Shown: positions 198-62,945, counted from the first letter of the stretch. The stretch: DNA of 64,000 nucleotides from Pavona decussata (GCA_977016875.1 CDRNST010000096.1:1612001-1676000), one strand, 5' to 3'. Notes: generated by a model from the sequence alone, not told the origin. Made by a program: numbers and translations.

Positions 198-479
198 TCC
201 ACTATATCAGTGAGATGTTTGGCCAGCAGCTGAATGGAGAACACCACCCTTTTTGGAAGTGCTCCTTAGTTGGTGCTTTTGCTTAGAGAATTTTTTGAAA
301 TTGCAACTGCGTTACCAAGGCCTTCTGCTTCTTCTTGTCCACTATATCAGTGAGATGTTTGGCCAGCAGCTGAATGGAGAACACCACCCTTTTTGGAAGT
401 GCTCCTTAGTTGGTGCTTTTGCTTAGAGAATTTTTTGAAATTGCAACTGCATTACCAAGGCCTTCTGCTTCTTCTTGTC
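198..479. repeat. 140-bp tandem duplication
   Basis: tccactatatcagtgagatg...cttcttgtc at 198-339 and again at 338-479; one mismatch (g311/a451). Confidence 0.95.
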
Positions 480-960
480 TGTAGCAATCTTTCTCAGGCC
501 TTCTTTAACTCCCTTTGCAGATTTCCAAGGACCTCCTAACTCTGCAACACCACTGACAAGATTAATTCTTCGTTCTCTCATTTTCCTTCCAGCCTCCTCT
601 TTTGCTCTCTGCGTTTCAATCGATTTCTCTTTTCGCTGCTGAAATATTTTCTTTTTCCTTTCTTTGTACCTTGCCATTATCGCACCATTGTTTTGCCTTG
701 CATCGGTCATTAATTTCTCTTTGTCTTCAGGAGAGATGGAATTCAGCCAGGAGGTGGTCTTCTTGTTTGTCCACATCAGAAGTGCTTCGTGGGAAATCAG
801 TCTTGCTGCTGGTTTTAAGTGCAACAGTAAATCGAACACCCCAAAATCTCTTTCAGACGTCATGTTGGTTGCTGGAACATTTTTCGCCTGTCCAATTAAG
901 TCTAAAGATGGAGAGGCTACTTTCCACCTGGAAGCTGATCTTGTGCTTGCTGTTCTAATA
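423..960 (-). pseudogene. C-terminal fragment of a probable DNA-transposase-like protein
   Basis: ORF has PATNMTSERDFG..LKPAA...EALLMWTN.KT.WL followed by a basic coiled coil, reminiscent of hAT-like C-termini; family uncertain. Confidence 0.35.
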
Positions 961-1450
961 AAATAAGCCACGAGTCAGTGTGTCAAGCTGCTCACTTTGC
1001 TCTGCAAAAAGGTTTTCATACATGTCATCTTTCCAATGTGTAATGAGGCTCCTAACTCTTCAGCTGCCTTTGTCATGTTTGAAGCATTGTCGGTGACATA
1101 ATTAAAATGTGATTAATCTAAATATACAAGCCTAATTAAAGTTTCTGTCAACCTATTAAAAGTTGATCTTATTTTTGAAAACAATTCAAATTGAGTTTTT
1201 TGTATCACCATTCTCATTGTCCTCAATAGGTGATGCCTTTGAGGCCACCTGGAACCAACTTCTGCACTACAACAAATCCTTAGATGTGGGTGAGAGTTGG
1301 GGCTAAAAGCCGAGGGTCACTTTCATTCAGTGACACACTTCTTCCAACTACGTCAATGTCCCCGATCCTCAACTGCAAGATTTTAGCCGTCAGGGCTGGG
1401 ATGTACTGATTACCCTTGTTTGTCGTTACTATCTTCACATCCCACTGTTA

Positions 1451-2211
1451 TGTCCTCTGGTTATACTCCCTTGAGACAATTTGGTCTCCTAATTTACTGT
1501 GTGCTTGGGGCTGGTTGACATGGAAATTCAGTCAATACCTTTTGTATTGATTATTTATTACATGAACTTTTGGAAAATGCAACAGGAAAAGGAGAAATAA
1601 TTATTAATTATTAATATTGTTACTGCTTGTTACAGATCTCTATAGTTTTTATAGCTTTCAAACTGTAATAATAAAATGTGAACAGATAACTAAAAGCATA
1701 CTTCAAAGGTGTCCTCTTTGGAGTGTACGCTAGAGTCAGGCTGTTAGCACCCTCAATGTGGCCCATGTGTCTATTGGGCCAACAAACAAAAAAACAGTCA
1801 GACACTGCAAGAAATTTATTCCAAATCAGAACACTAACTGGTACCCTTTAGCTATCCTGTTACAAAAGGAAAATAAAAATTATAGTAGTAGAGAGGTTGA
1901 TGATGATTGAGGTTTCAGTAATTGCTTGTGGTGCCACTGTGTTCCTGCAGTTCCTCAGAAATGAATAATGAATGATACCTGAATCTGACAACATTTGAAG
2001 CTATCAAGGAGCTCTGGGTTTAGCACAATGTTTTGCAGTTCAGCAAAGTCCTTGTCTCCTCGATCAAACCATGGCAGGTTGTCATCATTCTGCTGATCTT
2101 CCTGGTCACAACTTCCACCTAACCATTCGTGTGAGTCGCAAACATGATGAAGTAAGCCAATCGACTTATCCTGACAAGTTTAGAGAAAGGAAAATAATGC
2201 CATTTAAAATT
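1451..2211. repeat. Source copy of a ~760-bp local duplication (second copy 3145-3912)
   Basis: tgtcctctg.ttatactccctt...atgccatttaaaatt occurs near-identically at both positions. Confidence 0.95.
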
Positions 2212-2940
2212 CCAAAAGGGTTAGCTAGTCAGGAATTACATGAAGTGGAAGTCCTTACTGTCCCTTACTACATTTGGAGTACTTCACCAGAATCACTTTT
2301 GCAGATTTTGACAGTTACAGTACAGCCTTCAAGGGCATAACCCCTCACCCAACCCCAAATCCTGCCTGCAATGAGCTGAAGGCCTGGATCTGCATCTGCC
2401 AATTAGACTTAACAGAAAAAATTCTTTCCCAGAAGCACAAAAAAAATTGAACACTACACAAGACCTAGAAGAGGTACCTCTTTACCTAATTTTACCTTCA
2501 TAATTGTCAATGCTTCCTCATCAGATGTTGCCTCTGTAGTGTGTGTACTGTGGCGTACTATGTGATTATACCAAGCTTTAATTTTGGCCATAGGTCTAGC
2601 TTATCCCACCTAAAACAAACATAACAATTTGAAAAGAATACATGTTGGTGAAAGGAGCACTAATTTAAAATTGTAAAGTATACAATGTTTGCCTACAACT
2701 GCACTATTTCCATAGAGACCACAGTTCACAAAACCTGAAAAGGTGCAATACTACCGATGTTTTACCTACAGGAACATTACATGTTTGAAACTGTTACATT
2801 ACTGTACAACACATTCCTGACAGTATGCTCCTTCTGCACAAAACAAAATTTGACAAAGCTAACCTTTGCTAAACATTTTCTTATACTCTTTGATTTGTGC
2901 CAGACATCTAGGCTATGAACAACATCACTGCACTCGTTTG

Positions 2941-4480
2941 CTAAATCTAAATCTAAATGTCGTTATGTCGGCAAAGTCGTGGGACATCATGCCAACTCTA
3001 AAATAATAATAAATAAAAATATACAAAATAACAATAAAAGTTAATCTACCAATAAGAATTAAATGAAATTAGTTTACTTTTAAAAATGCAGAGAGATTGG
3101 CTGGAAACAGTTTCTTCTGGAAGTTTGTTCCATTCATTCTGTTGTGTCCTCTGTTTATACTCCCTTGGGACAATTTGGTCTCCTAATTAACTGTTGCTTG
3201 GGGCTGGTTGACATGGAAATTCCAATCAATACCTATTGCATTGATTATTTATTTCATGAACTTTTTCAAAAGGCAACAAGAAAAGGAGAAATAATTGTTA
3301 ATTATTAACATTGTTACTGCTTGTTACAGATCTCTATAGTTTTTATAGCTTTCAAACTGTAATAATAAAATGTGAACAGATGACTAATAGCATACTTTGA
3401 AGGTGTCCTCTTTGGAGTGTACACTAGAGTCAGGCTGTTAGGACACTCAATGTGGCCCATGTGTCTATTGGGAAAACAAACAAAGAAAAACAGTCGGACA
3501 CTGTTGCGAGAAATTTATTCCAAATCAGAACACAAACTGTTATCCTTTAGCTATCCTGTTACAAAAGGAAAATAAAAATTGAAGTAGTAGAGAGGTTGAT
3601 GATGATTAAGATTTCAGTAATTGTTTGTGGTGCCACTGTGTTCCTGCAGTTCCTCAGAAATGAATAATGAATGATACCTGAATCTGACATAACATTTGAA
3701 GCTATCAAGGAGCTCTGGGTTTAGCACAATGTTTTGCGGTTCAGCAAAGTCCTTGTCTCCTCGATCAAACCATGGCAGGTTGTCATCATTCTGCTGATCT
3801 TCCTGGTCATAACTTCCACCTAACCATTCGTGTGAGTCGCAAACATGATGAAGTAAGCCAATCGACTTATCCTGACAAGTTTGGAAAAAGGAAAACAATG
3901 CCATTTAAAATTGATAAAAGTTAATCTACCAATAAGAATTAAATTAAATTAGTTTACTTATAAAAATACAGAGAGATTGGCTGGAAACAGTTTCTTCTGG
4001 AAGTTTGTTCCATTCAGTAATCGTCCTGGGAAAGAAAGAAAATCTAAAAATATCTTTGTCCTTTCGGTAGAACAAATTTAAAATCATGGCTTCCCCGAGT
4101 CCTCCTTTCTCTGCTTGGTATCAAATAATCCCCCCAGTCCCCATCTAGGAGGCCGCGGCACATCTTGTATATGGTGGAGAGCCTTGCATGTCTTCTCATT
4201 GTTTCAAGTGTGTCCCACTGTAGGGACAAGCTCGGTCAAGCTCGTTGTTCGATCGTAATTTCCAGTGACAAAGCGGGCTGTTTTCCGCTGTACCCTTTCT
4301 AGAGCAACTTTATCTTTCTGGTAGTGTGAGTCCCATGCACTACAGGCATACTGGAGTTTTGGTCTCACAAGAGTCTTGTGCGCAGTTTCTTTCACTGACT
4401 TTGGACAGTTCCACAGGTTACGCTTGATAAGTCCCAAGACTTTATTTGCCTTAGATGTGATTGGTTCAATATGTGGCAGA
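2941..4480 (-). mobile_element. 5'-truncated CR1/L2-group LINE (RT C-terminus, 3'UTR, (ATTTAG)n tail) interrupted by the 3145-3912 duplication
   Basis: KANKVLGLIKRNL..LVRPKLQYACSAWD..LERVQRKTARFV..RRTRGSHDFKF..SFFPRTITEWNKLP; tail ctaaatctaaatctaaa at 2941. Confidence 0.85.
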
Positions 4481-7400
4481 AATAACAAATCAAATGTGAC
4501 ATACATCAAAAGGCAAGGAGAAAGTAAGCATAGCTCAACACAAAGCAATATCATAAAAAACACAAGGATAAATTATTTATTATGACTTGGATGTGACTTC
4601 AAAAATCACATAATTCTCACCAACTAGTTTCTTGATGGAAGCCAATACATCAGTGACGATGTCCACGACATTCAGGACATTTTTCAGCTGATGTTATGCA
4701 TTTTTTCAAAGCCTGTCATTCCATGTTGGTGGAAGCCAAACCAGCGCGGCGTTTGTCTCGCACCTCAAGGTCCAGGACATAACCTGATGTGCATTCCATT
4801 AGGAAATAGCAATTTTTTTTCCACTAAATCCGGCCGAGTTGCACTGACCCTTACCACCAACAACATCTTTTCCAGAGAACTCTTCAACAAGATTGCCCCT
4901 CATCCACTGCCACCAAGCAAGGCAAGGCTCATAAATTGAGCCATTCCATTAATTTTTCCAAAGTTGTTGCCCAAAAAAAGAACTGCTGCTTAGCTCAGCA
5001 GATTGTTGACATAAATACCATTGACTTCATGAGAAGAGCAAAACCTAAAGTTATGGCCAGCTTCACAGGTTGTTGTTTACAACAAGAATTGCACACACAA
5101 AGTGATGCTTTAGCCTTGGAGTATACAGGCAACCAGGTGTCTGACAACATTTAGAAAACAGCTCAAGGAACAGGTCCAAAGAAAAGATAATTTTTTCACT
5201 TTTACAAAGTGCAGCTCTTTTCTTAGCCCAAAGCCCTCTTCACCTCTACTCAGCTTGAGGTGTGGTCCATGAATGGGATTGTCTTCCAGTGGTAAGCCAA
5301 CTTCAGTGTTGGTATTGACCTCCTTTGGTTCAAGGTCTTGTTCTGGACCATCTTCAAATTCTTCATCTAATGAAGTGATGTTATCAGCTCCAATGACTAA
5401 TGACAAATGAGTTCAATTAAAATCAGATATTCTTAGCTTTGGAAAATAATTAAAGAAGATTTGCATCATGACACTATGTATTAAATAAATTTTTGACAAA
5501 TACACATTACTTATGTTTTAACCTAGCACATCTGTTGTGGTACAATAAATAAATTAAACTGATTTAAAAAATTTCAAAACAAAAACAGCATCATTTTGTT
5601 TTTGTTTAGAAATTTTTAAACCAGTTTAATTTTTTATTTCTTTTTGTCTCAGATCATGGTAATGAGTACGGCAATGTGTACTGTAATATGTACACAAAAA
5701 TACAAAGTAAGGTGGCAAAGTTCAAAAGAAGCATGGTTAAAAAAATCAGTACGCTTGACAGAAAACATAATTCATCTTACTCTGTTTCCTGCGACTCCAT
5801 GTCACTATCATCAGCTCCAATGAATTGTCTGTGAATTGTCAAATCAATACAAGTATTAAAAACCTTACAATTCTTGGTACTATTTCAGGGAGTTTGCATC
5901 TGGCAACAATATGCAATACATGTATTTTGAATATACAGCTTTTACACGCATAACTCTAACAATATTTCAACTAATATTACCATTTCTGGGTACATGCATG
6001 AGATGAAAGGTACATTGTAGCCACATTAAAGTGAAGCTTCAAGCTAGCCATTATAATCTCATCTACAATAAAAGTAATAATAACTACCAAGACATGTTCC
6101 CATTTGTAGCTGGTTTGCCTGATTTGATCCATATCTTGGCTCTCAGCTTTTCTGAATCGATATCGAGGCTTGGTGACATGAACAGTTGTGACAGTAATGC
6201 AGGAGTTAGACAAGGCCTCTCACCTGACAAGGATGACTGAGCAGCGATCAAAGGACCTTGCACAATAGTACCAGCTAGATCACCTGCAGCAACAGCATTA
6301 GGCACATTTGAGGGGACCATTGAAGCAGAAGCTGCAGTGGTAGAGGCTAAGACCCGGAGAAGGCCTGTGGCTCAGGACCGGAAGAAAGTGTGTCACTGGT
6401 AGCTTGCAACATAGGAGAAGTACTGTCATTTGTCTGAAGAGGAGAAAGGCATCTGGTCATCTTCAGCATGACACAGGAGACTAAACTGTCCATGATATCT
6501 GTGGATAAGGTAGGAGGTTGCTGAACTGGTAGCTGGCCAACCGCAGAGCTAGCTGAAGATATATTTGCTCATTTACCACAGATATTAAGCCAAGCAAAAC
6601 TCTGAAATCTGAATATACAGTGACCCAATTTATAATGATTAAGCATGTTTTGATTCAATTTTATCATTGGTCCAATTTGTTGTTTTCCTTTATTCTGTAC
6701 TCTTTACCATACATTAGCCATAGACAAAAACAAAGGATAATATATATGGAACCAAGTCTAATACATTTATTATTAGAAAAAGACCTTACCCTTATTTCTG
6801 TGATTCAACATCACTATCAAGGGTTCTTTCTTTATTGAGATCATCAATGGCAGACCTGAAGAGTTCCTGATAACTATGAGAATAAAGAACCTGCAGTCAA
6901 TTTGACCTTCAGTGACCCTTTCCAAGTTTTCGTTTACTGGAGTGAGAAAAGGAAGTCTGACATCTTCTGTTGAGGAGAAGGGAGTTCTTCCCCCTTTATG
7001 ACTATTACAAAATATATTATTACAGAAAGTAAGTTATAAATTATACATTTTCTCTTTTAAGTGAGATGCTATACAGTGTATGTTACCATCTGTCCTACGG
7101 AACCATTAATAGATAAAAGTTGATCACGGTATCTCAGTAAGCATAATTACAAAAAAAAGCATAAATGCAGAACTTTGCCGACCTCAGAGGCTCACAAGTA
7201 CACTGCATGATCTGGACATATCTAGACGTGTGCTTGTCCATATTCAGAAGGATCCACAGCACATAAAATAAACATAAATTTAGCTGACATCGTCTGAACT
7301 GATCTCTTCAACATCACCAGAAGAGCCCTCATTGCAGAAAACATGGAACTGTTTACTTCCCTTGAGTTGTCACATATATTTACTTAAGCAAAAAAAAGAG

Positions 7401-7539
7401 GGAATAGGTTACCATACATGTAAATTAAATGAATAAGCACCAAGCACCCTATTTAAGTGAGCACCCCTCTACACATCAAAAGGTTACACCAGTACCCCTT
7501 CATATTGAGTGTCCCCTTTCCAAAATGTCATTCAAGGAC

Positions 7540-8560
7540 GTTTGAGAGGCGTTAATTTGCTCATATTCAGCTGGTTATATCAGTGATATGGCATTCCTTT
7601 TCCTTTACAAAGAGTATGAGTCGGTGAATTTGTGTTTTCCTTACTGGGAGTACGACTCATTTCGACCAGATGCGCTGGATAACAGCAAATATAAAGCTGA
7701 ATTTATGGTGGAAAAAGAAGACATTCTTGTCTCCTCGTTGTCTTAGTCATGAAGGTTCTTGGTTTGTAGTTTATAATATGTGGCACAGCCTTGGGCGTTA
7801 AGGTGTGCATCAATTCATCGGAATCACAGGACCCATCTGGTGAACTGGCAGTTTTTGCATAGGCTTTCTTACCCTTGTCATTATCATGATATAATCCATT
7901 GTTTCAGTAGACCTGTACCCAAGCTTTGTTTGTGCTTGACTGGATGTATGATAATCATGGCAACCGCTTGACGTTTTGGACCAACCAGCCCTTTCTATCG
8001 CCAGCTAACCTAGAGCGTTACGCTCGGGCCATAACAAAGAAGGGCAGTCCTCTAACCAAGTGTTTTGGGTTTATTGATGGAATGGTACGCCAAATTTCTA
8101 GGCCAGGTGAAAACCAGTGCATACTTTGTAATGGGCGTAAACGAGTGCATGCATTGAAATTTGAATCCGTAGCAATTCTTAATGTAATTATAGCAAACTT
8201 GCATGGCCCTGTTGAGGGTTGTCGTCACGATGCTGGCATGCTAAAAGACTCTGGTCTTTTACACATACTGCAAAGAGAAGCATACACACCCAGGGGATCC
8301 TCTATGCTTATATGGAGATCACCCTTACCCTCTACATCCCCAGTTGATGTCTCCATTTCGGAGGCTGATGTACCAATACTTACACCAGAAATGAGGGCAT
8401 TCAACACTGCTATGAGTGAAGTTAGAGTGTCCGTAGAATGGCTGTTTGGTAATATTGTAGAGTATTTTAAGTTTATCGATTACAAAAAAAACCTTTAACT
8501 GGGTATGAGTGCAGTAGCTAAACAATACATTGTGAGTGCACTTTTTGGAATATTTGGCAT
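7540..8560 (+). pseudogene. PIF/Harbinger (HARBI1-like) DDE transposase pseudogene
   Basis: RLSYPCHYHD..FSRPVPKLC; CFGFIDG.VRQISRP..NGRKRVHALKFESV..GPVEGCRHDAGML..AMSEVRVSVEWLFG. Confidence 0.88.
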
Positions 8561-8739
8561 GATAAGTCATACTAATTCAATACAGTAGAAGATCGCCCTA
8601 TAAACTCTTTGATTCTTTTAAAACCATTATTTAAATGTGACATTTAAACATTCACCATGCATGTTTGCACTTAAACAAAGTGTGACTACTAGTAAGCATT
8701 TAAAAACTGTAAATGTCACTAAAACACTCAACTAATCAG

Positions 8740-8970
8740 GTTTGGTTATTTTAAAATAATGGCAAAGTCTGCATTTGTTGCTGTTGCATGTTCATCTGCT
8801 TTTCAAGTAGCTCTTGCCGTTTTATGTCAATGGAAGGCATCTCCCTGCAGTACTTTAATTCCTCTTGTTTCGTCTTTCACCCTGCTCTTGCACGAACTTC
8901 AGAGCATCACTTCACACCTTTTTCTGCTTTTCTTTGGTACAAAAGTTTTTTCATCAGTCAAATTGTCATC
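8740..8970 (-). pseudogene. C-terminal remnant of the convergent Harbinger accessory ORF
   Basis: Tail-to-tail with the transposase; Gln-rich coiled-coil end (RQELLEKQMNMQQQQMQ). Confidence 0.4.
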
Positions 8971-9729
8971 TGATTAAAGAAATAACTCGTCTCTAAAGAA
9001 AAAGCAAGACAAACATTTGAAAGCATTTTTAATTGGATTTGAAATCCCCTCCTCACAAAATTACAGTAACCTCCCTCTCCAACCCTTCCACCTACAATCA
9101 CACACAAGGATTTCACTTCTGGAAAAAGCTAAAATCCCTGGTCTAAAAAACATGTTTGAACTGCTGTTGCAAATTCAAGTTCCAGCTCTCCCCCCCCCCC
9201 CCCCCCCACCCCATACGCACAAATACAGACACAAAGTTGAATAGGAGCTGGTCTATCTTGCAAGTTCGTGGCCGATGCCATCTTGGCTGAGCAAGAGAAA
9301 GAGTTACCCGCTGACCACCCATACCTTTTTTTCTGTTCGTGTTAGTACGTCATGTAACGGAAACAGACAATCTACACACACAAGCAACACAACGCACAAA
9401 CAGTCGAAACAGACAGAAAACAATCAAAATTGTAAAACCTTAGACTTGTAGTATGATCTCCATGTACATTTGTGTAACACTGGGCAATTTTGTCAAATCT
9501 TGAAAAGACCATTCAAACTGCTTTATTAACTTAGATTTCAGCTATTTATCATCAATAAATCATTTATTGTTCAATTTCTGTTGTTAGTTGGGCATTTATA
9601 AGCAATCAGAAATTACCCATAATTCCTAGTGGGCGTGGCATTTATCAGGAATAATTAATGGCATGCAAAATACAGCGAAAAAATGTTCAGTGTACAGCCT
9701 GAAGTATAATTTTTTTTACAAAGAAGCTA

Positions 9730-11480
9730 TTATTCGTTTACTTCCAAAGGAACCTGAAAGATCCCTATGTGTTTGTGTTTCAGTTCCCCACAAACATGAC
9801 AGACAGTGCCAACAAGCACAAATGCTGATTTGCTTTTATCTAGTTTGTAGGTCATGTCAGTCAAGTTGTCTCTAACAAAAAAATTTCCCTTTAACACAAC
9901 AGAGCCTCTTTCAAATGAACAGCCATAATCATCTGTGACAGCACTCTCCAGTTCAATCACACCATCAATGGTTACTTTCAAGAGGTAACACTCATAGTCT
10001 GGGTCGTCAGCAGCAGCAATAGCAACCACCCTTCCTTTGGTGGCCAGGTCAGCAATCCACATGACAGTATCAAGGAGACCAGCTTGTGTTGTCTCAACTG
10101 TCTGGCGAGCGGTCGCATCAGATGACTCTCTTTCAAGTTGTACTTCTCTCCATTCATCAACCCACTCTTTGTTGGTGCACTTGCCCTCCTCCCCATTAAT
10201 ACAGTCAATGCAATAACATGTTCGGTTGCGAACAAAGACCTTTCCTTGTTCAGCTGTTTTTTTCACACAGTGTAGTTTCCTGATTCCTTTGAGTTCTTTG
10301 AATGTTGTCCCTGGCCTGTTCCTCACAATAGCTTCAGCACCTTCTGTTGGCACATAGAAAAATACCTACAGCCTTCTGTCTTGAGGCAAAAGTTGTCGCT
10401 GTTGGAGAGGTGAATGTACTGTTCAGGAATTCAGTCATATCTTTGCAACTCCTGATGAAAGCTGTTTTCCCGAGTAGAGCTTGGCTGACCTTTTGTTTCA
10501 TATTTGCCCTAGCAGCGTCCTGTTCTCCTTTAGCATGAGAAGTTTCAAAGAAACTTCTCTGCACAAGAAATCCAAAATGAGCTAAGGAACAAGAAATAAT
10601 ACAGTTACGTGACTTGTATTGGGCTGCACAGCCATCTGTGAACTCCTGCATTTTGTGGATGTCCATTTTTACTGTCTTTAAGGTAACCCTTTACAAGCTC
10701 TTGGGCCTTGTGAACTGCATGATAGTCCTGAACATCATATTCTGAGATGACGGACAGGTGTTCTTTCACAATGTGAGGGTCCTCCTCTGTGCTTGCCCTA
10801 CCATCCATGGACTCATGACAGTAAAGAATAGTTCTGTGAAGAGACACCTTTGCAACATCAAAGTACTCTAATTGTAGTTCGTCTTGCTGTCTACAGCTGT
10901 AGCCTTCTGAGTAATCATGCACACAGAGAACATCATTGATGGGAAGGTGTTCATTTAAGTTGTCCATTTGATCTCACTGCCATTTGGCCATAAATGAATG
11001 GTATGGATAATCTTTAAGAAGATCCAGGAAGTAATTGAAGAGATGATGTGGTGGCGTCTGCTTCGTAATCAATGCTATCTTCTTTTTTTCTTGGCCATTT
11101 GACAGGAATTTTGCAGTTTTAACATAAAAAACATAATGCCTCCAGATGACTACTTTGTCTGTTTCATCGGACAATTCCTCAGGTAGCATCTGAAACTTCT
11201 GGACTCCGCATAGATTACAATCTCTGTTTAGGCACTTAATCTTGTGGTATTCACTTTCTTCTGGCTTCTGACACAGAGTAAGATTTACTGCTTCTGTTAG
11301 TGTAGTTGGTATTTAAACAGAATCAGGGTTACCATTCTTCTTTACTGCTGCTTTGCGGAATTTCAGGCAGTCTTTAAAAACAAGTTGAATTTCCATGTGC
11401 TTTCGGCAAAGGCATGACCTTCAATCCCACTCCTTGGCTGCACGGACCAAAAAAAAGGCTTTAGAGCTTCAAATTTCCTT
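9730..11480 (-). pseudogene. Sola2-like transposase pseudogene
   Basis: SCLCRKH zinc motif; VHDYSEGYSCRQQDELQ; FTDGCAAQYKS; FFETSHAKGEQDAA; KGIRKLHC..CYCIDC, split over several frameshifted ORFs. Confidence 0.7.
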
Positions 11481-21350: not shown

Positions 21351-21580
21351 GGCTAAAAACCATGCAACAGTGTCAACGGAGCCCATCCCCCTTCCCCTTT
21401 TGTCACAAATAAAGTCTTATACTAAAAGTTGATAGAGATTCAGAGATTCTAATATGTTCTTAAAAGCTCCCCTGGATTTGTGACATTTCATATTGTCTGG
21501 TAAGGCTTTGCAAATTTTTGTCCCAGTGTAGGCAAAGCTGTTCCTATGGAACGCCAACACTGTCTTCTGTGAAGTTCTCC

Positions 21581-33854: not shown

Positions 33855-33884
33855 TAAAGGTATATAAATGTGAAGTTGGTCTAA

Positions 33885-41875: not shown

Positions 41876-41879
41876 GTGG

Positions 41880-48904: not shown

Positions 48905-49125
48905 GTAGTAGCCCCATGGTGGTGTACTATAGTGGTTGGCGTCTGGGGCTTTTCGATCAGAGGATGGGTGGTTCAAGACTTGGTCTCGGCAAAATGTCAT
49001 GTTCGACACTCAGGTGTTGACGTGGGTAATGCTGGGAGAAAGGTAACCCTAAGGTCAACTAGCACTTATCCAGGGTGGAGGAGAGAGCTCTCCAGTTGTT
49101 TCATGAAAAGAATCTGGAATTAAGT
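48905..49125 (+). mobile_element. Degenerate tRNA-derived SINE in intron 2
   Basis: tagtggttggcg..ggttcaagac A/B-box-like head followed by a SINE-like body. Confidence 0.45.
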
Positions 49126-51131: not shown

Positions 51132-54008
51132 CAGTCGCACCTGTATATAACGGCCACCCTCGGGACTTGAGGAAATGGCCGCTTAATACAGGTGGCCGCT
51201 TAATACAGGATCACTAAAAATACTCACTGGGCGTTGTCTAATGTCAATTTTAATGGTGTATCATACAATAACATTTTATGCAAGGAAACAATAGGACAAT
51301 CAACACTCTTTCAGTGCCAACTTGTAACTTAATGGTATAATATGTGACCTTGCACAAGAAAACGTACTTTAACGCTTATCCGTTAAACGGGCAATGCCGT
51401 TAAGTATCCGTTAATCATCCGTTAAAGAACTTTATCAAAAACGTTAGAGGCGTTAGCGTACCCGTTAAATGTTCACATCAAACCGTTAGAACGGTTAGCG
51501 TAACCGTTAAAGAGAATTTGGTAGCCGTTAGAGCGGCTTAGTAAGCCGTTAGGAAAATCCAGCATCTGTTTAACGGGTAAAGTAGCTGTTAAGAAACTTT
51601 GCATCCGTTAGAACAGATGAAGCGCTCTCCATCCTTAAAGCTATCCGCTAAACGATGTCACAAACAGTTAATATGAATCTTTTTTTAATTCCCAAGTCCT
51701 CTTGCTCTACAATAAGACGTCGAGAAATAACACCCGAAACTATTGTGCGTTTTTTAATTAACTGAGGAAATGCTGTTTTCAAAGTTTTGATTCGAAAGAT
51801 TAAAGTACAATCCAGCATAATTATGTGCAGCGCCATTCTTAGCTTCTTCCATTTTTTCGCTTCTTTCATTGTTTATTACTGGGTTTAGTGGACAGGTATT
51901 CCAGCCATCTGTCAGAGGAAGACACGGTTACAATTTGAAATGAAGAAAACGTGACATTGCCTTTTGAGATTCGATGATCTCGATAATGTTTATGCAAATT
52001 TGTAACGTTACGCCAAAGATGTAAACAAAGTCAGCTCAAAGGCAAGTGAGCGGCCACGTTGAAGTTTCCCCTGTTCCTTGCCGAATTCTACTGTAAACGT
52101 TGTACGTTTTTAAATAAGGAAATGCTTTTTCCGAGGTTTTCATTCGAAAGATTCAAGTACAATCAAGTATAATCTTGCGCAGCATACTGCTTTCGCAGCG
52201 AAGATATTTCAGAAGCGATCGTGTAACATTCCGCGAAAAAGCCGCAATCTTGGGTCATTATCAGGGAGGCCCTGGGTCATTATCTTGTCCACGTGCTGTG
52301 GCGTAAGAGTCGATCAATTGGAAGGCTGCTCTGAATCGAATTTATAAAGCCAAACATGCCAGCACTGCTAATGACTGCTACTTTTTTCAGTAACATTTTG
52401 TAAATAAAGTAGATAATTACAAAACAGCAACGATGTGTTTACTCGTGAGGGACTCGGGCACGTGGAATCGAACATAACGCGCATTTTGAATTTGCATAAA
52501 GTTGTTTATTTACTTTGACAGCTAACAGAAGCGCAACAACCGAGTAACGGACAATCTGTTTTCTTCTTCCTCGCTATAAGAGTTTGAAATAGTTAATACT
52601 AGGTATTCGTAATGTGGTAATTGAAACCAAAAAGTTTTCTCTTGATAGCGCCTGGAATCACAGATACAATTTTTGGTTCAGAAACTGAAGCCAACTGAAG
52701 CATGCGAGGTGTCCTGGGATCCCAGACATTCTATGGGTGCGTGTATAAAACAAGGGGTGCAATGAAATAATTTTCGTTTTCATCATTTTAGTATCCGGGT
52801 AGCTTACCTTGGAAGTCAGATTCTTAGAACACTGAAAAAAATTTTTCTCTTCGAAAAATTCGAATTGGTGAGTCGCGACTCAAGTTCATAAGCTAACTAG
52901 ATCGAACGAGCGACTCGATTATTTCTCGTTTGAGTTTGATCTGTTATTTGGTTAAGAAAAGCCTTTTTTCAGCCTGTCGTGAATTCGATGCTTGGTTTGT
53001 GGGCAGTGTTGGGTTTTGTTTGAGTCGCTTCACTCGTTTCCTTCAATCGTTTCATCTCAAGTTTTCGCTTCTAACTGTAAATCTTTACCGTATTGTTTTC
53101 GCTATCGGCTGCGCCTTTTTCGTCATAACTCCACAGCCGTTAAACGCTTTCAGGTGGCCGTTAAACAAACCGTTTAACGCCTTTACAGCATCCGTTAGAT
53201 ATTTTGCTCAACCGTTTAACGGCTCAAGCTATCCGTTAGAGCAGATTGTGCAACCGTTCAAACGCTTTTGCAATCCGTTAGGCATTGCTTATTATCCGTT
53301 AGAACGTTAGAACAAAACGTTAAAACGCTTTGGAGGCCGTTAACCATCCGTTGGCTATCCGTCCGTTTTTACCCGTGTAACGGATAAGCGTTAAAGTACG
53401 TTTTCCTGTGCAAGGTCACATATACGTAACATTGTGTAAAAGCACTGTGTAATAAATTGTCCTCTACTCTTGTACGGTGTACAGTACTGTATTTCTAACT
53501 CACTTACTTACGTGACTTGCAGTTCACAACAAAATATCTCATTCCATCATTTCATAGTTGTTACGATCGAAGTGGAGTTATAACGGTTATGTTGCTAATT
53601 AAAAGTAACACAATATATAACAAAATTCTTCAAGTTAAAATAGGAATGGGGTAAGAATTACGGTGACTTAAACAAGCGGGACACGTGCATTTGGCACCTC
53701 GGAATTTGAAACTTTTGTTTGTAGAGCAAGTCGTTGACTGTCGGCACTCCCAGCGACAATTCCTGTTATCCATGCCACTGTGCATATGGCTTTTCCATTC
53801 AAGGGTGGCTGCTTAATACAGGTAAAAATAACAAAGAAAGACAAACATGGAACTGCAACAGGGTGGCCGTGGCCGCTTAACAGAGGTGGCCGCCTAATAC
53901 AGGTACCAAATACAGCGTTTGTATGGGGGGGAAATCGGGACTTTAAAAAGTGGCCGCTTAATAGAGGGTGGCCGCTTAATACAGGGCCGTTATATACAGG
54001 TTCGACTG
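51132..54008. mobile_element. Tc1/mariner (pogo-like) MITE inserted in the RING exon
   Basis: 24-bp TIR cagtcg(c/a)acctgtatataacggcc; TA TSD; subterminal ggccgcttaatacagg repeats. Confidence 0.88.
51344..53419 (-). mobile_element. Second Sola1-like non-autonomous element, nested in the mariner MITE and opposite in orientation to 46186-48232
   Basis: TIR gtgaccttgcaca.gaaaacgtactttaacgcttatccgtta; ATAT TSD; CCGTTA arrays. Confidence 0.75.
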
Positions 54009-54281
54009 TATAACACACTCAAAACATACAAGAAATTCTTTAATGAGAGAATTTTGACTGCCCGAAGAATGAAGACATTTGTATTCAGTTCCATGTGGAT
54101 TGCCTTATTCACTGTCTCCTTGATATCTGCCAGGTTGATATCTATGTAGGAAAACAGTAATTGAAGACATTAACACTAATAGTCAAAATTGTTGCTGTAG
54201 GAAGACAGTTTTACAGACCTGAATTTACAGCAGGCTTTGTTGTAGATTTTGAGCCTTTATCATCATCATCATCACCAGACT

Positions 54282-55283
54282 TTCTACTTCTGAACTTGTT
54301 CTCTTCTTTTTATGGAATTCAAAGATCTACAAAGGATTGCCGCCTGGTGCTGTGCGCATAGTCTCTTGATTAACCCGGACAAGACGAAGTTGTTGCTGCT
54401 CGGGACTCCTCAGATGCTGGCTCGCGTACCAGAGGGATTTGCTGTGTCCTTGCTTGGGAAAGGGATATCACCATCCCTTTCTGCCAAAAGTCTGGGTCTT
54501 GTTCTGGATTCACATCTAAGTTTCGATGAACATGTCACTGACTTAGTATCCAAATGCACAGGTAGCTTGTGTCAATTAAATCGTGTCAAGCACTTATTTG
54601 ACAGATCAACACTGATAACAATCATAAGTGCTTTGGTGTTTAGTAAGCTGCTCTACTGTTCGTCTGTGTGGGCGGGTCCGACCAAGAAAAATATCAAAAG
54701 GTTGCAAAAGGTACAGAACTTTGCTGCACGAATCGTAACTGGTACACGTAAATTCGACCATATCACCCCCTATTTGAAAGATCTACGCTGGCTTCCAGTT
54801 GCTATGCAGCTGGAGGTCAGGGACACTATGATGACTTACAAAAGCCTCAACGGCCTCACTTTAAGAAATTTTTTCACGACAATATCGGAGATCTATGAAG
54901 GAAATACTAGAAATAAGGACAAACTGCATGTACCTCTCTACAGAACAACTACAGCACAGTGATCATTTAAATACAGGAGTACTTCTCTGTGGAATAGTCT
55001 ACCTAGGGAGATTCGAGATATTAGCTCTTTAGACTTTTAAAAAACAAATCATGAATCAGGCTTTTTATAAATTCTTAGAAAATAATTAGTGATTGCAATG
55101 AAATCTTATGATGTTGTTTTTTAACTCGTTGGTAGTTCTGATGATGTGTAACATACGCATTATCCTTTATTTAGATATCTTCTCATAGTATTTATATTGT
55201 ATTTGGTTTCTTTTATATATCTCATCGTAGTTGGTTTCTGAAAAAACCATTAGTGGATGGAATCAATAAAGTTGTATTGTATT
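54282..55283 (+). mobile_element. 5'-truncated L2/Crack LINE
   Basis: WCCAHSLLINPDKTK..LGLVLDSHLSFDEH..LQKVQNFAARIVTG..LRWLPV; AATAAA and (TTGTA)n tail; short GACT flanking repeat. Confidence 0.9.
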
Positions 55284-57172
55284 GACTGGTGGAACAGGTC
55301 CTTAGATAAAACAAACAGGATAACAAAAAGTTACAAAGTAAGGTCCATAATTAGCTTGTTTTAGTCTTGGCTAAGGAAAGTCTAATATTTGTTTATTATT
55401 TTTGCGAAAAAATAAATGAAGTAAGAATCATAATTTTGGTTGGTAAATTATAGTTATAATTATGAATTCAACATTTCCAGTCTTCTGTTCAGACAAAGTT
55501 TCTTATTGATAATGCAGCATGAGAAAAAATACATCAACTGTTACCTCTTGTGACATCAGCATCCTCCACTGGTAAAGCGTTTGCAGTTACTAAGATTAGA
55601 TTGCTGTCTCCAAAGTCCTCTCTCATCTGTGCTGTTATGTATTCAACTGTTGCTGTGCTTTCATTGAGTGCAATGTAAGATTGTGTGGTAGCATTTACGA
55701 TCTTGTTACCACTCCTCTCTGCCAGGGTTACTTTAAGTGAATAGGTGGATGCCTTTTTCCCACTTGTTAATACTGACCTGCAGTAGTTATTGAGAACTTC
55801 TATCATGATTATGGTAAAGTAAAACTTTTTGTATTAGACAAACACATATAATCTTGTCATATAGACTGCTCTCTACCTTTTATAAACAAATCAATGTTTA
55901 GCCACGGAAAAAAGGGAAGGGCGGGCATATCCTGCGGATTTGACAAGGACAGGCGGGATGGGGATATTTGTGAAGTCCCAGGCATCCAGACCATTACATA
56001 CAAATATGCATACTTACTATACATACAAGCTTTATTGAAGCTCCCAAATTGGGTTTTTCAGCTACAATATACACGAAAAATACTGATGGAGAAACTAAAA
56101 AAAATACAAATTGAAATACTACAATATACCATTAGTTGTCTGGACTCTAACTGGTAACCAGCCACCTTCATGAAAAAGGTAAGAAATCTGAAATTGGCTT
56201 ATTGGGACATTACTGCATTGTGCTATGTTCTCAACAACTTGATTGACTTTGTTACCATATTATTTTTGTGTCCGGAATTTAAAAGTAAACAACCTAAAGG
56301 TACCAACCTAAACAGAGGCGAGTAATTTGGTCCCCTGCGGTTTACTTGTGATGTACCGGCGGCGGGTGAAGTGAGAAACGCATTCGATCGGCGCCGTCCT
56401 TCTACCGAAGAGAGGAATCCCTTCCAAAATCTGACAAATCAAAGCGCCCATCTCAGTTTGGACACTCTGTAGCGCCAGAAAACTCCTCAACAAGATGGAT
56501 TCCAACCGCATCAAGCTGCAGAAATTATGCAGAATTTCAACGATTCATCCTAAACCAAGGACAAGCTTTCAACACCGGATTTCGACTTGATTTGACTTTT
56601 CGATATTTCCTGAAACATATAGCTGAGCCTCTCAGCCGTTATTTGTGGTCTCTTTAGTCGCCTGTGGCTTCTATTTTCTCGTTCACCATGAAAAAACTGA
56701 AGAAGGTCCTCATCAGCCATGTTTTACCTCAGCAGACTATGCCGAATAACAAAAGCACGTGAACGTATTCCATGTGATTGGTCTTTGTTCGTTTCAGGCT
56801 TTATTGGACTTAAATGTACCGAAAGTAAGATACACCCGAAAAATTGAAATGTGGAAATTGGTATCCGAATTTCAATTTCCATTTTCCGTGAAAATTGGTA
56901 ATAAATTTTAATTTTTGTTGTTCTGGTAGATAGAAAATTGAAATTTGATGTTTAATTTTCAATATTTGTTTTCTTGGAAATTGAAACTCGAAAATCGAAG
57001 TTTAAATTTCGTTTTCTAAATTGTCGAAAAACGGTTGGCACTCAAGTACACGCATTGTTGATGTCGATTGAAAACTGAAGATGACTTCAATACGCCATAA
57101 GTTTGAGAAAAAGCTTTCCTCGGATATCCCTTATTTCATATACATCGTATTATTTATAGGCGTGATCATGGA

Positions 57173-59961: not shown

Positions 59962-60614
59962 AGCCTGGTTCACACTTGCGACATAATGGCATAAACATAA
60001 CGACATAAGAAGGATGTTATGTCGTTATGTTAGCAGTGTGAACATGTAAACATAATGACATATTGGCAACATAACGACATCGACATAACGACATAAGGAA
60101 AAAACTGATCTTTTCTTTATGTCGTTATGTTGTTATGTTGCTGTCAAACAAGTGTGAACAACTTCGACATAAGGACACAACAAACCACCAATAAGAGAGC
60201 GTCAAAAATTGTCGAGCCCAGTTCGCCACCAGTACTCTTTCAATATGGCGGCTACTGCGGAGTTGGAAGATATGACGGAGCAACCCTGGTGCGGCTCATG
60301 TAGATGAAGAAGAACTTGCTGAAACGGTTCAAACTTATCCAATATTGTATGATAAAAGTCGTGTAGATGCTCTTCTGGCTTCTTTCTGGAATACTGGACG
60401 CACCCACTCTTTTCTTTTAGCAATTTTTTCCCTTTGTTGTCGTCGACGACGCTTTTGTCGAAGAAACAAATTACATCATCTCAAAGGCAACAAGTGTTTG
60501 TTCTGCCATTTTTAAAGTATTCTTTCACCTAACCTTGTCTTGATGTCAGTGTTCACATTACCGACATAAGTGATTATGTCGTTATGTCATTATGTCGCAA
60601 TTGTGAACCAGGCT
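59962..60614. mobile_element. Non-autonomous Harbinger element with stubs of both genes
   Basis: TIR agcctggttcaca.ttgcgacataatg; TTA TSD; GACATAA subterminal repeats; + strand MADF-like start DEEELAETVQTYPILYDKS; - strand WVRPVFQ transposase N-terminus. Confidence 0.85.
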
Positions 60615-62153
60615 TTATAGTATACGTAATAACTTATATAAATACTTAAACTACAATACTCTTCAACCAATATGTTGAGAACGTTCATTAATATAATGAC
60701 TCTTGATCTAGATATGTACAACCAAGCACTAAAAACATTCTTGACCGACTCGATTGTATACTATTTTTAACAAGTAATAAAAACATTCTGCAATTTTTTT
60801 GTTACTTTGGAAAATTATCCAGTAATTTGCCATGTTGATATGTTGTTTTGTACAAGTTTCATCACATGACAGTGAATAGAGTTGCTTGTAAATAAATAAT
60901 ACATAACAGTCAATCACTCATCTAATTCATGGTAAAAATGACTATCATGGTATACTAAAATGTAAATTTATTTCCAGGCAGTTTCTTCAAGAATGGTTGT
61001 TTTATTCATCAACTTGGCTGCTGACATTTAGTCATATGAGGTAAGATTTTCGTATTTCATAGTCTCATGGTACAGTAGCTTACTGCATGAGTCCTAGTGT
61101 CTACGAAATAGAAAAATGGTCCTAAAAGTTAACCAACATTTTGAATGAACTTTATCTCTATACAAAGTTCTTTGAAATTAACGAGTGAAAATGTTGATAC
61201 CTAAAAATTGTCACTTTCAGCAAACAGACCTACTAAATGGTGGCACAGGTTGCCAAACTAAACAGACCATAGTTAACTTAAGTTCTACTTGCAGCTTTCT
61301 TACGAAAACTATATATTGATAAGTTTAATCAGGTTAATTAAAATGAAAAATCTGAAGACATTCTTTTGAGCAAAGCTAGATTTTTAACATTGATGCGATG
61401 TACTGCCCCAGGATTGTTAAATTCATATCTGATAAAAAACCACGAGACACAAATATTATTAACTTGAAGAAAATTTAAGATATCACCCGCAGATTACCTC
61501 TAGCAGCGAGTGTGAATTTGCATTCCTGTCAAATATAGCCAATTAAACTACAATACGGCTAAAAACATTCTAGATTTTCCGGACATTTTCAGTAACCAGA
61601 GCAAGAAGACTTAAACAAATCATAAATGTTGTTTACAACTTGTGCCATTTAAATTGCATTACTGTATGATGTCATACACGCTAAGCCTCATGGAGACTGG
61701 CCTAGTTTAGTAAAAATAGTGGGAATTAAAGCCAATGGGAAGTAGAAACATGATCGATATGATAAAAACAGTGTCTCTCACAGTCTCCGGTGTGCCTTAG
61801 TTAATTCAAAACGTCCAAAATGTACGACTGAAAGCAGCTGTAAAATGTAAACTTTCAACCATCATTTCACTTTAGACGTTCTTTCTGTGTGTAGCGTCCT
61901 TCTAAAACATTCCTTCACTGATTCAAACCATTTGCACATAAATAGCTTCAAAAAGGGAAAGAGTCAGATTCTCAAACTTTCAAGAAATGCAATTATATTC
62001 CAGTTGTGGAAGGACCTGAAACACCTGAGCCATCTCCTAAGCTGGTCACAGTCATACGTTTTAGGTGTACATTTTAAATTAACTGGCGCACAAGAGAATT
62101 TCTTCTTCTGTGACATCGCACTTAATTTGGAATGCTGATCACCTCAAACAAAC

Positions 62154-62945
62154 TTATTCTTCAACAGGGGTGATAATTGCTGATCTTCCTTTCCTTTGTT
62201 GAAGCTGCCTGAAGTTTGTGAGGGTTGGATTGCTCTGTGGCCACTGGCCTTTGGTCACCAGTACCAGCCTGTTGCACACATTCTGGGTAGTGGCATACAC
62301 ACCGTCAAGTTTGTTTACTACTGGATGAATGCTTTCAGAGCAATGCTCTGCTTCCATGCCGATGGTTCCCTTTAGGACTGCTTTTTCCGGGACATGGAAG
62401 GTCAACACATGGAACTTTCGAAGAAGGCTTGCATCAGGAAAATTCAATGGGAACCAAGACCCAAAACTGGCACACCATACTGAAAGAAAAGCAACTTCAT
62501 GACAGCAGAGAGGAGAGCTTCTTGAGTACAGGTTAAAGCACATAGATAACTTGAATAACAATGTTGAGATTTTGTTCATTGTCTTGGAGTGACTGTAGAC
62601 TTGTGTGTCCCCACTGCATAAATTGACTTTCAGTGGCTTGAAGACTTTTACTATTTTCTTAATTTTTTGTGTTCTCAAAATTTTTGCCACATCATTGCCC
62701 ACCAAAGCACCTTTGTGATAAACTTGTCGTTTCAAATTCATCTCTTCCAATGTGGAATCAAGTCTCTTTTGAAAGGGACCTTTCAGATGACTTATCCTTT
62801 CATTGACCTTCTGCAGCCGATCTTTGGACTTTCTCAAATTTTGTTGGTATTGCTTCGCTTGTTTCTGTTGTTGATCCCTTTGTTTCGTCAGTTCTGTTGC
62901 CTTCTCTCTTGCTCTCACAGCCTTTTTTGTGTGAACTTGAAACCT
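62154..62945 (-). pseudogene. Last exon of a Chapaev/Transib/RAG1-like transposase
   Basis: LKRQVYHKGALVGNDVAKIL..KFHVLTFHVPE..GTIGMEAEHCSESIH; 254-aa open frame with an AG acceptor near 62945; upstream exons not identified. Confidence 0.65.

What the first reader, a model, noticed from the sequence alone, without database searches (positions are those of the whole stretch)
400..62945. Strand-biased patchwork of TE fragments: candidate uni-strand piRNA cluster (transposon trap)
Seen: about 20 recognisable coding remnants from unrelated superfamilies lie on the minus strand versus about 7 on the plus strand. Between ~9.7 and 41.9 kb essentially all are minus, except cargo inside one TIR element. 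Many are short truncated pieces abutting each other without their termini (BEL/SINE/Academ; SWIM/Mutator; RAG1-like/EnSpm). Known: uni-strand piRNA clusters such as Drosophila flamenco accumulate antisense TE fragments, and cnidarians have a Piwi/piRNA pathway. Inference: a long plus-strand precursor would yield antisense piRNAs against many TE families.
Basis: partly seen in the sequence, partly recalled or inferred. Interest (0 to 1): 0.72.

Follow-up and report, generated by a model that had tools for sequence, protein, structure and literature searches.

The report
Transposon graveyard with modest strand bias
A gene-poor stretch of a coral genome is packed with dead transposons that mostly point one way, but the skew is no stronger than chance produces many times in a genome this size, and nothing available shows that the region makes piRNAs.

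Summary
The count is real. In the window, transposon (TE) coding remnants favour the minus strand: 9 to 3 elements with Pfam support, about 17 to 6 with long ORFs added. About nine or ten consecutive minus elements lie between 9.7 and 41.9 kb.

The skew is modest, 70-75%. Its P value runs from 0.02 to 0.15 depending on the counting rule, before any correction.

The unselected flanks lean the same way: 11:4 to 13:4 by Pfam, one-sided P 0.02-0.06. The TE block runs from about -12 kb, just after a homeobox gene, to at least +164 kb.

Genome-wide, neighbouring TEs of different families are near random in orientation (54 same, 41 different within 50 kb). Same-family neighbours are co-oriented, probably through duplication.

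Uni-strand piRNA clusters are already known in Nematostella. Published coral clusters are TE-poor.

The scan has flagged this pattern 35 times on other DNA of this genome, never with RNA support.

Verdict: an ordinary TE island. The piRNA-cluster reading is possible (about 0.25) but unsupported.

The parts
426..974 (-). 183-aa ORF of a repeated family. No Pfam family. A hAT-like 'SERDF' motif seen by eye only.
   Evidence: Copies at 86% and 74% identity elsewhere in the genome.
3914..4572 (-). 3' fragment of a high-copy retroposon-like repeat, with a 122-aa ORF at 4207-4572 that I read as a LINE RT tail. Strand assigned from the ORF only.
   Evidence: Many copies at 89-96% identity. No Pfam hit.
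7911..8495 (+). Harbinger/PIF transposase fragment.
   Evidence: DDE_Tnp_4, E 1.4e-6, 28.4 bits, above cut-off.
9733..11312 (-). Four consecutive frame-shifted ORFs of one old element, superfamily unresolved.
   Evidence: Weak Zn_Tnp_IS91 hit, E 7e-4, below cut-off. Nearest genomic copy only 69% identical.
13253..16141 (-). 2.9-kb repeated element with ORFs at 14116-16000, one carrying a SAP domain.
   Evidence: SAP, E 2.4e-10. Copies at 90-93% identity on three contigs.
18727..19481 (-). Truncated piggyBac transposase, profile positions 5-216 of 349. Ancient.
   Evidence: DDE_Tnp_1_7, E 1e-21 and 6e-13. Best other copy 69% identical.
21545..24040 (.). TIR element with inward-facing low-complexity ORFs.
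   Evidence: Inverted repeat 21545-21963 / 23657-24040, 84% identical. Copies at 92-95% identity.
24280..25369 (-). BEL/Pao fragment (24280-24552) next to a 195-aa ORF (24785-25369) with no Pfam family.
   Evidence: Peptidase_A17, E 9e-7, profile positions 68-113 of 162.
28805..30312 (-). 1.5-kb repeat with a coiled-coil ORF and an ORF1-like ORF (29255-30138).
   Evidence: Baculo_FP_2nd, E 9e-7. Copies at 91-93% identity.
30817..32029 (-). Truncated Mutator-like transposase.
   Evidence: Mutator, E 5e-19, profile positions 49-229 of 357. SWIM itself not confirmed by Pfam.
32079..35035 (-). Complete Harbinger element of about 3 kb with frame-shifted ORFs.
   Evidence: HTH_Tnp_4 E 2e-16 and DDE_Tnp_4 E 2e-20. 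90% identical over its full length to at least four copies; intact Harbinger ORFs lie inside two of them.
38750..39666 (.). 0.9-kb element with 42-bp terminal inverted repeats. Holds a 184-aa ORF on the minus strand; its orientation means little.
   Evidence: Copies at 91-92% identity and TIR self-matches. No Pfam hit.
41098..41914 (-). Weak EnSpm/Tnp2-like remnant.
   Evidence: Transposase_21, E 4.5e-4, below cut-off.
41854..42936 (+). piggyBac transposase remnant, abutting the previous part head to head.
   Evidence: DDE_Tnp_1_7, E 5e-16 and 1.5e-10. Also listed as C96:1654076-1654711:+.
44153..44524 (-). Internally deleted Harbinger remnant: an HTH tail fused to the DDE C-terminus.
   Evidence: DDE_Tnp_4 E 3e-9 and HTH_Tnp_4 E 1e-5.
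45482..57056 (+). Composite plus-oriented block. It holds an integrase-like ORF (48517-48843), two TIR repeats of about 2 kb (46181-48236 and 51336-53424) and a LINE-like tail (54294-55284).
Evidence: rva_4, E 0.0016, weak. Repeats at 88-94% identity.
62157..62951 (-). 265-aa ORF, no family found.
63367..64000 (+). Cys-rich (CXC-like) ORF. A P2RX7_C-domain ORF follows just beyond the window end, at 64114-64713.
   Evidence: no family for the CXC-like ORF. P2RX7_C, E 3e-28, in L011.
1..18000 (.). Right part of a strongly CpG-depleted block. CpG o/e is 0.23-0.47 in all but one 2-kb bin (0.84 at 12-14 kb). The block starts sharply at -12 kb in the left flank.

Best explanation
This is an ordinary TE accumulation zone. 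The gene-poor block starts about 6 kb downstream of a plus-strand homeobox gene, at window coordinate -12 kb, and runs to at least +164 kb.

Insertions of many superfamilies have piled up here over a long time. Nested insertions and deletions have left truncated pieces next to complete but dead elements.

It is not the mark of a dedicated function.

Shown: TE content, ages, truncation, counts, and the lack of segmental duplication inside the block.
Inferred: that orientation is unconstrained, and that the CpG depletion of the left 30 kb reflects the TE-directed methylation already described in cnidarians.
For: Element counts and P values:
- 9:3 by Pfam in the window.
- 9:6 by an automatic ORF rule in the window, and 27:16 over -13..164 kb.
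- 14:5 above Pfam cut-offs over the whole block, two-sided P 0.064.

Genome-wide baseline: TE hits of different families within 50 kb are 54 same-strand and 41 opposite (P 0.22); at 50-100 kb they are 40 and 40.

Inside the window, same-family copies are not co-oriented: Harbinger + - -, piggyBac - +.

Ages are mixed and mostly old: 69-96% identity to other copies.

The youngest insertion in the block, a Gypsy with LTRs 99.4% identical, is on the plus strand, and so is an 875-aa open ORF with no Pfam family.

There is no depletion of poly(A) signals on the proposed precursor strand: AATAAA is 29 on plus and 15 on minus in the core.

CpG depletion is patchy, not domain-wide. TE-targeted methylation is known in cnidarians (PMC8857917).
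Against: The flanks, which played no part in selecting the window, lean the same way. Pfam-supported elements there are 11:4, or 12-13:4 once small ORFs are added (one-sided P 0.06 to 0.02).

Among 88-129-aa ORFs of the block, TE domains were found in about 9 of 96 on the minus strand and 0 of 99 on the plus strand (Fisher P 0.0014). These ORFs are not all independent elements.

Pooled over the block, 22:7 gives two-sided P 0.008.

Elsewhere in the genome, islands holding decayed piggyBac, Mutator, hAT and EnSpm copies are co-oriented in 16 of 19 cases. That grouping was chosen after seeing the data. It suggests some TE islands here may be orientation-constrained.
Confidence: 0.45

Rival explanations
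1. Uni-strand (flamenco-like) piRNA cluster. A long plus-strand precursor starts near -13 kb, from its own promoter or by read-through from the upstream plus-strand genes. It runs rightwards through minus-oriented TE remnants and is processed into antisense piRNAs.
For: - Diverse, nested, truncated TEs with no recognisable host gene between -12 and +164 kb.
- 70-75% of remnants on the minus strand in both the window and the unselected flanks.
- Upstream genes (homeobox at -18.8 kb, WD40 at -32 kb) lie on the plus strand.
- Some remnants are 88-96% identical to families with intact members, so some derived piRNAs could still pair with them.
- Most Nematostella clusters are uni-strand, 402 of 457 (PMC5731801).
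Against: - No RNA evidence of any kind.
- The bias is much weaker than flamenco's and not significant after correction.
- The youngest insertions are in sense orientation.
- The plus strand of the core has more poly(A) signals, not fewer.
- Several remnants are too diverged (69-74%) to guide anything.
- Coral piRNA clusters called from small RNA data have lower-than-expected TE density (PMC13343488).
Confidence: 0.25
2. The block lies in introns of an unannotated plus-strand host gene or long non-coding transcription unit. Insertions in sense orientation, which bring poly(A) and splice signals, are removed by selection, leaving an antisense excess. No piRNA production is involved.
For: Antisense TE excess in introns is well established in mammals, flies and plants (general knowledge). 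The -12..+18 kb segment is as CpG-depleted (0.25-0.47) as the likely gene bodies of the left flank, with a sharp edge at -12 kb.
Against: - No plus-strand ORF of 88 aa or more in the block carries a host-type domain, apart from one HeH/LEM hit.
- CpG depletion is patchy and absent at 46-62 kb.
- CpG depletion is equally explained by TE-targeted methylation (PMC8857917).
- There is no sense-strand depletion of AATAAA.
- Introns of tens of kb are unusual in corals (general knowledge).
- Short exons cannot be seen with these tools.
Confidence: 0.15
3. The block belongs to a genome-wide class of TE islands in which old cut-and-paste transposon remnants are co-oriented for a reason not yet identified. 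One possibility is an orientation-dependent loss or retention process tied to chromatin or replication.
For: One comparison per island among piggyBac, Mutator, hAT and EnSpm hits gives 16 same and 3 different (P 0.004). Mutator-piggyBac pairs are 11:0. Their order and spacing vary, so they are not one composite element. In this block those four families are 6 minus to 1 plus.
Against: - The family grouping was chosen after seeing the data.
- All-family cross comparisons are near random: 37:31 per island and 54:41 per pair.
- The only cross-family pair from this locus in that data set (hAT at -4.4 kb minus, piggyBac at 42 kb plus) is discordant.
Confidence: 0.1

Closest known systems
Drosophila flamenco and flam-like uni-strand piRNA clusters (PMC10643416)
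   Same: TE-dense and gene-poor. Many unrelated, truncated and nested TE remnants. Lies next to a host gene on the strand of the proposed precursor. Majority of remnants on one strand.
   Different: Flamenco is dominated by Gypsy-type LTR elements and is far more strongly antisense than the 70-75% seen here (general knowledge). Here cut-and-paste remnants are at least as common as retroelements. Flamenco's promoter, precursor and Piwi-bound piRNAs are shown by experiment; none is known here.
Nematostella vectensis uni-strand piRNA clusters, 402 of 457 (PMC5731801), and Hydra one-strand clusters (PMC3592418)
   Same: Same phylum. One-strand source loci exist, so the mechanism is available.
   Different: Those loci were defined from small-RNA reads. 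Nothing in the passages I read describes them as co-oriented TE graveyards of 100 kb or more. This locus is defined only by TE orientation.
proTRAC piRNA clusters of Acropora pulchra, Porites evermanni and Pocillopora tuahiniensis (PMC13343488)
   Same: Stony corals. LTR and DNA transposons are enriched in those clusters relative to the genome.
   Different: Those clusters overlap genes and intergenic DNA and show lower-than-expected TE density. This block is almost wholly TE.
Antisense TE bias inside introns of long genes (general knowledge from mammals, Drosophila and plants)
   Same: A moderate (60-75%) orientation excess of TEs relative to a transcription unit, without any small-RNA role.
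   Different: No exons or transcript are known here.

Membership tests
Uni-strand (flamenco-like) piRNA cluster | Dense 24-31-nt, 1U-biased, oxidation-resistant small RNAs from one strand | not testable with these tools
Uni-strand (flamenco-like) piRNA cluster | Long single-stranded precursor transcript from a defined promoter | not testable with these tools
   No RNA data. Only genome-type contigs carry the window's ORFs in the assembly index.
Uni-strand (flamenco-like) piRNA cluster | Strong majority of TE remnants antisense to the precursor | tested here: inconclusive
   70-75% on the minus strand: 9:3 in the window, 22:7 over the block, 27:16 by the automatic rule. The direction of transcription is unknown, and the bias is not significant after correction.
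Uni-strand (flamenco-like) piRNA cluster | TE-dense, gene-poor, with diverse truncated and nested fragments | tested here: met
   At least 8 superfamilies. Pfam matches are partial. No host-type domains from -12 to +164 kb except one kinase fragment and a P2RX7_C ORF.
Uni-strand (flamenco-like) piRNA cluster | Fragments close enough to active TE families to guide silencing | tested here: inconclusive
   Some fragments are 88-96% identical to families with intact ORFs (Harbinger). Others are only 69-74% identical to anything.
Uni-strand (flamenco-like) piRNA cluster | Recent insertions preferentially antisense (trap behaviour) | tested here: not met
   The youngest element (Gypsy, LTRs 99.4% identical) and an 875-aa open ORF with no Pfam family are on the plus strand. 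A largely intact hAT and a 95.9%-LTR Gypsy are on the minus strand. The sample is small.
Intronic antisense TE excess | Flanking exons of one gene on the strand opposite to most TEs | tested here: inconclusive
   No host-type domain in plus-strand ORFs of 88 aa or more, apart from one HeH/LEM hit. Short exons are undetectable without RNA.
Intronic antisense TE excess | Gene-body-like CpG depletion across the unit | tested here: inconclusive
   Met for -12..+18 kb, patchy to +46 kb, absent at 46-62 kb. TE-targeted methylation explains it as well (PMC8857917).
Ordinary TE island with unconstrained orientation | Orientation counts compatible with a fair coin once non-independence and multiple testing are allowed for | tested here: met
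   Two-sided P ranges from 0.008 to 0.15 by counting rule. About 180 windows are expected by chance at 20:7. The cross-family baseline is 54:41.

The most novel reading that the evidence does not exclude
This coral genome holds a set of 50-200-kb TE islands in which old remnants of unrelated transposon superfamilies are held in one orientation. These would be flamenco-like uni-strand piRNA 'traps' in a cnidarian. The block from -12 kb to at least +164 kb would be one of them, transcribed rightwards from beside the homeobox gene.
Probability: 0.2. Interest if true: 0.6.

Novelty: already known. Interest (0 to 1): 0.27.

Why it matters
If this locus, and the roughly 35 similar ones flagged in this genome, really were one-strand piRNA traps, it would show that the flamenco type of genome defence exists in corals. 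That would mean large, TE-only loci with orientation selection, predating the split between bilaterians and cnidarians. It would also contradict the TE-poor picture given by the first coral piRNA-cluster survey.

As things stand, the main value of this check is a caution. A 70-75% strand skew among two dozen remnants is expected by chance in well over a hundred 64-kb windows of this genome. Orientation alone should therefore not be used to call piRNA clusters.

Tried and rejected

2. Control windows for an empirical null. I used strand tables of seven Pfam TE families instead. These list only the best-scoring, mostly young copies, so they are a weak proxy for old remnants.

3. Direct versus inverted orientation of nucleotide-level repeats inside the block. 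There were too few usable pairs, 10 v 7.

4. Segmental duplication as the cause of co-orientation inside the block. Rejected: no large internal duplications were found.

5. GC skew. It roughly follows the strand of the coding remnants within the window and parts from it beyond about +140 kb, so it adds no independent evidence.

6. Poly(A)-signal asymmetry. It gave no consistent depletion on the plus strand.

7. CpG depletion as a proxy for transcription. The pattern is interesting, but TE-targeted methylation is known in cnidarians (PMC8857917), so it does not discriminate.

8. tRNA and Rfam scans, to orient SINEs. Nothing was found.

9. Transcript-like contigs carrying window ORFs. Only two large assembly contigs came up. 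Absence there says nothing.

10. The labels Academ, SINE, SWIM and RAG1-like could not be confirmed with Pfam.
Full report
**Where the window lies.** The window is G000:C96:1612001-1676000 of a 602-Mb assembly in 1,180 contigs. Earlier notes of this scan call it a stony coral; I did not verify the taxon. The window has no N runs. GC is 34-42%.

**What the window contains.** I listed stop-to-stop open frames of 90 aa or more (103 of them) and scanned the plausible ones against Pfam.

Minus-strand hits above Pfam cut-offs:
- SAP-domain ORF 15617-16000, inside a 2.9-kb repeat
- piggyBac 18727-19481
- BEL/Pao 24280-24552
- Baculo_FP_2nd ORF1-like 29255-29719
- Mutator 31238-31744
- Harbinger HTH+DDE 34056-34994
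- Harbinger 44153-44524

Two more minus-strand hits are weak and below cut-off: 10977-11312 and 41510-41914.

Plus-strand hits: Harbinger 7911-8495, piggyBac 41854-42936, and a weak integrase hit at 48517-48843.

That is 9:3 elements at E<=0.01, or 7:2 above cut-offs. Adding long ORFs without a family gives about 17:6. The added minus-strand ORFs are 426-974, 4207-4572, 11595-12202, 24785-25369, 38806-39357 and 62157-62951. The added plus-strand ORFs are 50210-50665, 54294-54959 and 63367-63813.

The run of minus elements from 9.7 to 41.9 kb is real.

Most Pfam matches cover only part of their profile, so truncation is real. Some elements, however, are complete. The Harbinger at 32079-35035 matches copies elsewhere over its whole length of about 3 kb at 90% identity, and intact Harbinger ORFs lie inside two of those copies.

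Ages are mixed. Identity to other genomic copies is 88-96% for many pieces and only 69-74% for the piggyBac fragment and the 9.7-11.3 kb element.

No tRNA gene or Rfam family is present.

**Is the skew more than chance?**
- Two-sided binomial P is 0.15 for 9:3, 0.035 for 17:6 and 0.019 for 20:7.
- An automatic rule gives 9:6 in the window, 8:2 in the 9.7-41.9 kb core, and 27:16 over the whole TE block. The rule takes non-shadow ORFs of 130 aa or more and merges same-strand neighbours closer than 1.5 kb. It is conservative, because it fuses neighbouring co-oriented elements.
- About 20% of ORFs of 130 aa or more are expected by chance.
- At 20:7, about 180 of the genome's 9,410 64-kb windows, and about 15 of the 783 windows this scan has annotated, would qualify by chance. 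The scan holds 35 notes of this kind for this genome.
- A run of 9 or more like-oriented elements among 23 has probability 0.03 in one window. It would therefore be common genome-wide.

**The flanks.** I fetched 100 kb on each side.
- Left of about -12 kb lie host-type ORFs: a homeobox at -18.8 kb (plus), WD40 at -32 to -35 kb (plus) and ankyrin at -39 kb (minus).
- From -12.3 kb the DNA is TE-rich to the end of what I hold, +164 kb.
- Pfam-supported minus elements in the flanks: RVT_1 at -12.3 kb; a largely intact hAT with an Ulp1 protease ORF at -6 to -2.6 kb; HTH_21 at 73 kb; GIY-YIG at 75 kb (weak); Crypton-type DUF3504 at 78-79.5 kb; Tnp2 at 82 kb (weak); YqaJ at 86 kb (weak); hAT at 88.2-90.5 kb; Harbinger at 91 kb and at 99-100 kb; rva_4 at 105 kb; Gypsy at 153.7-158 kb.
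- Pfam-supported plus elements in the flanks: P2RX7_C at 64.1 kb (not TE-specific); RVT_1 at 84.0 kb; Harbinger at 84.7 kb; Gypsy at 134-139 kb.
- The flanks give 11:4 from the scans of ORFs of 130 aa or more, and 12-13:4 when the small-ORF hits are added. One-sided P is 0.06 to 0.02, or 7:3 above cut-offs. One of the two small-ORF hAT hits could not be located.
- Among ORFs of 88-129 aa over the whole block, TE domains were found in about 9 of 96 minus-strand ORFs and 0 of 99 plus-strand ORFs (Fisher P 0.0014). Six of those nine are window ORFs already counted, and some belong to the same element.
- Pooled, the block is 22:7 (P 0.008), or 14:5 above cut-offs (P 0.064).

The lean towards minus does extend beyond the window, at about 70-75%. 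Each independent part is only borderline.

**Genome-wide baseline.** Instead I took the strand tables of seven Pfam TE families searched over the whole genome and analysed 903 hits. The families were piggyBac, Harbinger, RVT_1, Mutator, EnSpm, hAT and BEL.
- Same-family neighbours are strongly co-oriented out to about 200 kb: 68 same v 10 different within 50 kb, 24 v 4 at 50-100 kb, 27 v 9 at 100-200 kb, and random beyond. Many such pairs have identical scores, and there are tandem arrays. Direct segmental duplication is the likely cause.
- Cross-family neighbours are near random: 54 v 41 within 50 kb (P 0.22), 40 v 40 at 50-100 kb, and 37 v 31 with one comparison per island.
- One subset stands out. 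Islands holding piggyBac, Mutator, hAT or EnSpm hits, whose lists reach decayed copies, are concordant in 16 of 19 cases (P 0.004). Mutator-piggyBac pairs are 11:0, with no fixed order or spacing. That grouping was made after seeing the data, and I leave it as unexplained.
- The one cross-family pair from this locus in the data set (hAT minus, piggyBac plus) is discordant.
- Inside the 264 kb there are no large duplications, so duplication does not explain the local skew.

**Sequence proxies for plus-strand transcription.**
- GC skew roughly follows the strand of the coding remnants within the window and parts from it beyond about +140 kb, so it adds no independent evidence.
- The proposed precursor strand carries more AATAAA than the other strand in the core (29 v 15). 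The reverse holds at 64-124 kb (56 v 80). This gives no support.
- CpG o/e drops sharply from 0.9-1.2 to 0.25-0.47 at -12 kb and stays low to about +18 kb. It is patchy to +46 kb, 0.5-1.2 at 46-62 kb, and low again at 64-70 kb.
- This suggests long-standing germline methylation of part of the block. However, cnidarian methylation is reported to target transposons directly (PMC8857917), so it does not show a transcription unit.
- The youngest insertion, a Gypsy whose LTRs are 99.4% identical, is on the plus strand, and so is an 875-aa open ORF with no Pfam family. A trap under orientation selection does not predict this, although the sample is small.

**RNA evidence.** Three window ORFs looked up in the assembly index occur only on two large contigs of another assembly, with no short transcript-like contigs. 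That absence says nothing.

**What is known.**
- Nematostella has at least 457 piRNA clusters, 402 of them one-stranded (PMC5731801).
- Major Hydra clusters map to one strand (PMC3592418).
- Three stony corals have 47-107 proTRAC clusters with 1U and ping-pong signatures but lower-than-expected TE density, overlapping genes and intergenic DNA (PMC13343488).

One-strand clusters in cnidarians are therefore not new, and the coral clusters described so far do not look like this block.

**Verdict.** The interpretation cannot be decided with what was available. My estimates:
- 0.45 that this is an ordinary TE island whose skew is sampling noise.
- 0.25 that it is a one-strand piRNA source.
- 0.15 that it lies in an unannotated plus-strand transcription unit with antisense retention.
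- 0.10 that it belongs to a class of orientation-constrained islands of unknown cause.

Small-RNA and stranded RNA mapping, together with a genome-wide orientation null, would settle it.

Noticed in passing
Genome-wide, e.g. G000:C273:5125713-5167220 and G000:C139:5263-42899: Neighbouring hits of the same TE family share a strand out to about 200 kb (68 v 10 within 50 kb). There are tandem arrays: 7 piggyBac fragments at a 5.87-kb period and 5 Harbinger copies at a 9.29-kb period. Many pairs have identical scores. Direct segmental duplication seems common in this genome.
   Followed up: partly
Genome-wide islands, e.g. G000:C36:2582590-2635457, C195:2805615-3227916, C90:805693-873544, C34:862721-906937: Decayed piggyBac, Mutator, hAT and EnSpm hits within one island are nearly always on one strand (16 of 19 islands; Mutator-piggyBac pairs 11:0). 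Harbinger, RVT_1 and BEL hits, which are young intact copies, are not. The grouping was chosen after seeing the data, and the pattern is unexplained.
   Followed up: partly
L009-L010 and window 1-18000 (window coordinates -12000 to +18000): There is a sharp CpG o/e boundary at -12 kb, from 0.9-1.2 over the homeobox gene region to 0.25-0.47 in the TE block. This points to a long-standing methylation boundary.
   Followed up: partly
L018:264-4712:+ (window coordinates 134264-138712; LTRs at 133599-134124 and 138870-139395): An apparently intact LTR retrotransposon with one 1,483-aa ORF whose domains run gag (SCAN, zf-CCHC), integrase, RT, RNase H. The integrase lies upstream of the RT, as I recall for Gmr1-type Gypsy elements. 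Its LTRs are 99.4% identical, so it is very young.
   Followed up: no
L010:4045-7391:- (window coordinates -5955 to -2609): A largely intact hAT element carrying a 483-aa ORF with an Ulp1 (Peptidase_C48) protease domain next to the transposase.
   Followed up: no
L014:727-3098:- and L014:6395-6958:- (window coordinates 94727-97098 and 100395-100958): A string of five minus-strand ORFs (155-284 aa) with no convincing Pfam family and an unusual N/D/K/E/Y-rich composition. They may be a remnant of an unclassified element or virus-like insert.
   Followed up: no
window 63367-63813:+ and L011:114-713:+: A Cys-rich CXC-like ORF is directly followed by an ORF with a strong P2RX7_C domain (E 3e-28). 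This could be a host gene or TE cargo, and it is the only non-TE-type domain close to the window.
   Followed up: no
window about 10.6 kb v 29-55 kb (L021-L023): In another public assembly (ENA ERZ25073805) the window is split over two contigs with two-fold different stated coverage: 66x for the part holding 10.6 kb and 132x for the part holding 29-55 kb. The left part of the window may be a haplotype-divergent region.
   Followed up: no
window 9700-41900: AATAAA is about twice as frequent on the plus strand (29) as on the minus strand (15) in the all-minus core. This is the opposite of what minus-oriented TEs with their own poly(A) signals would give.
   Followed up: no
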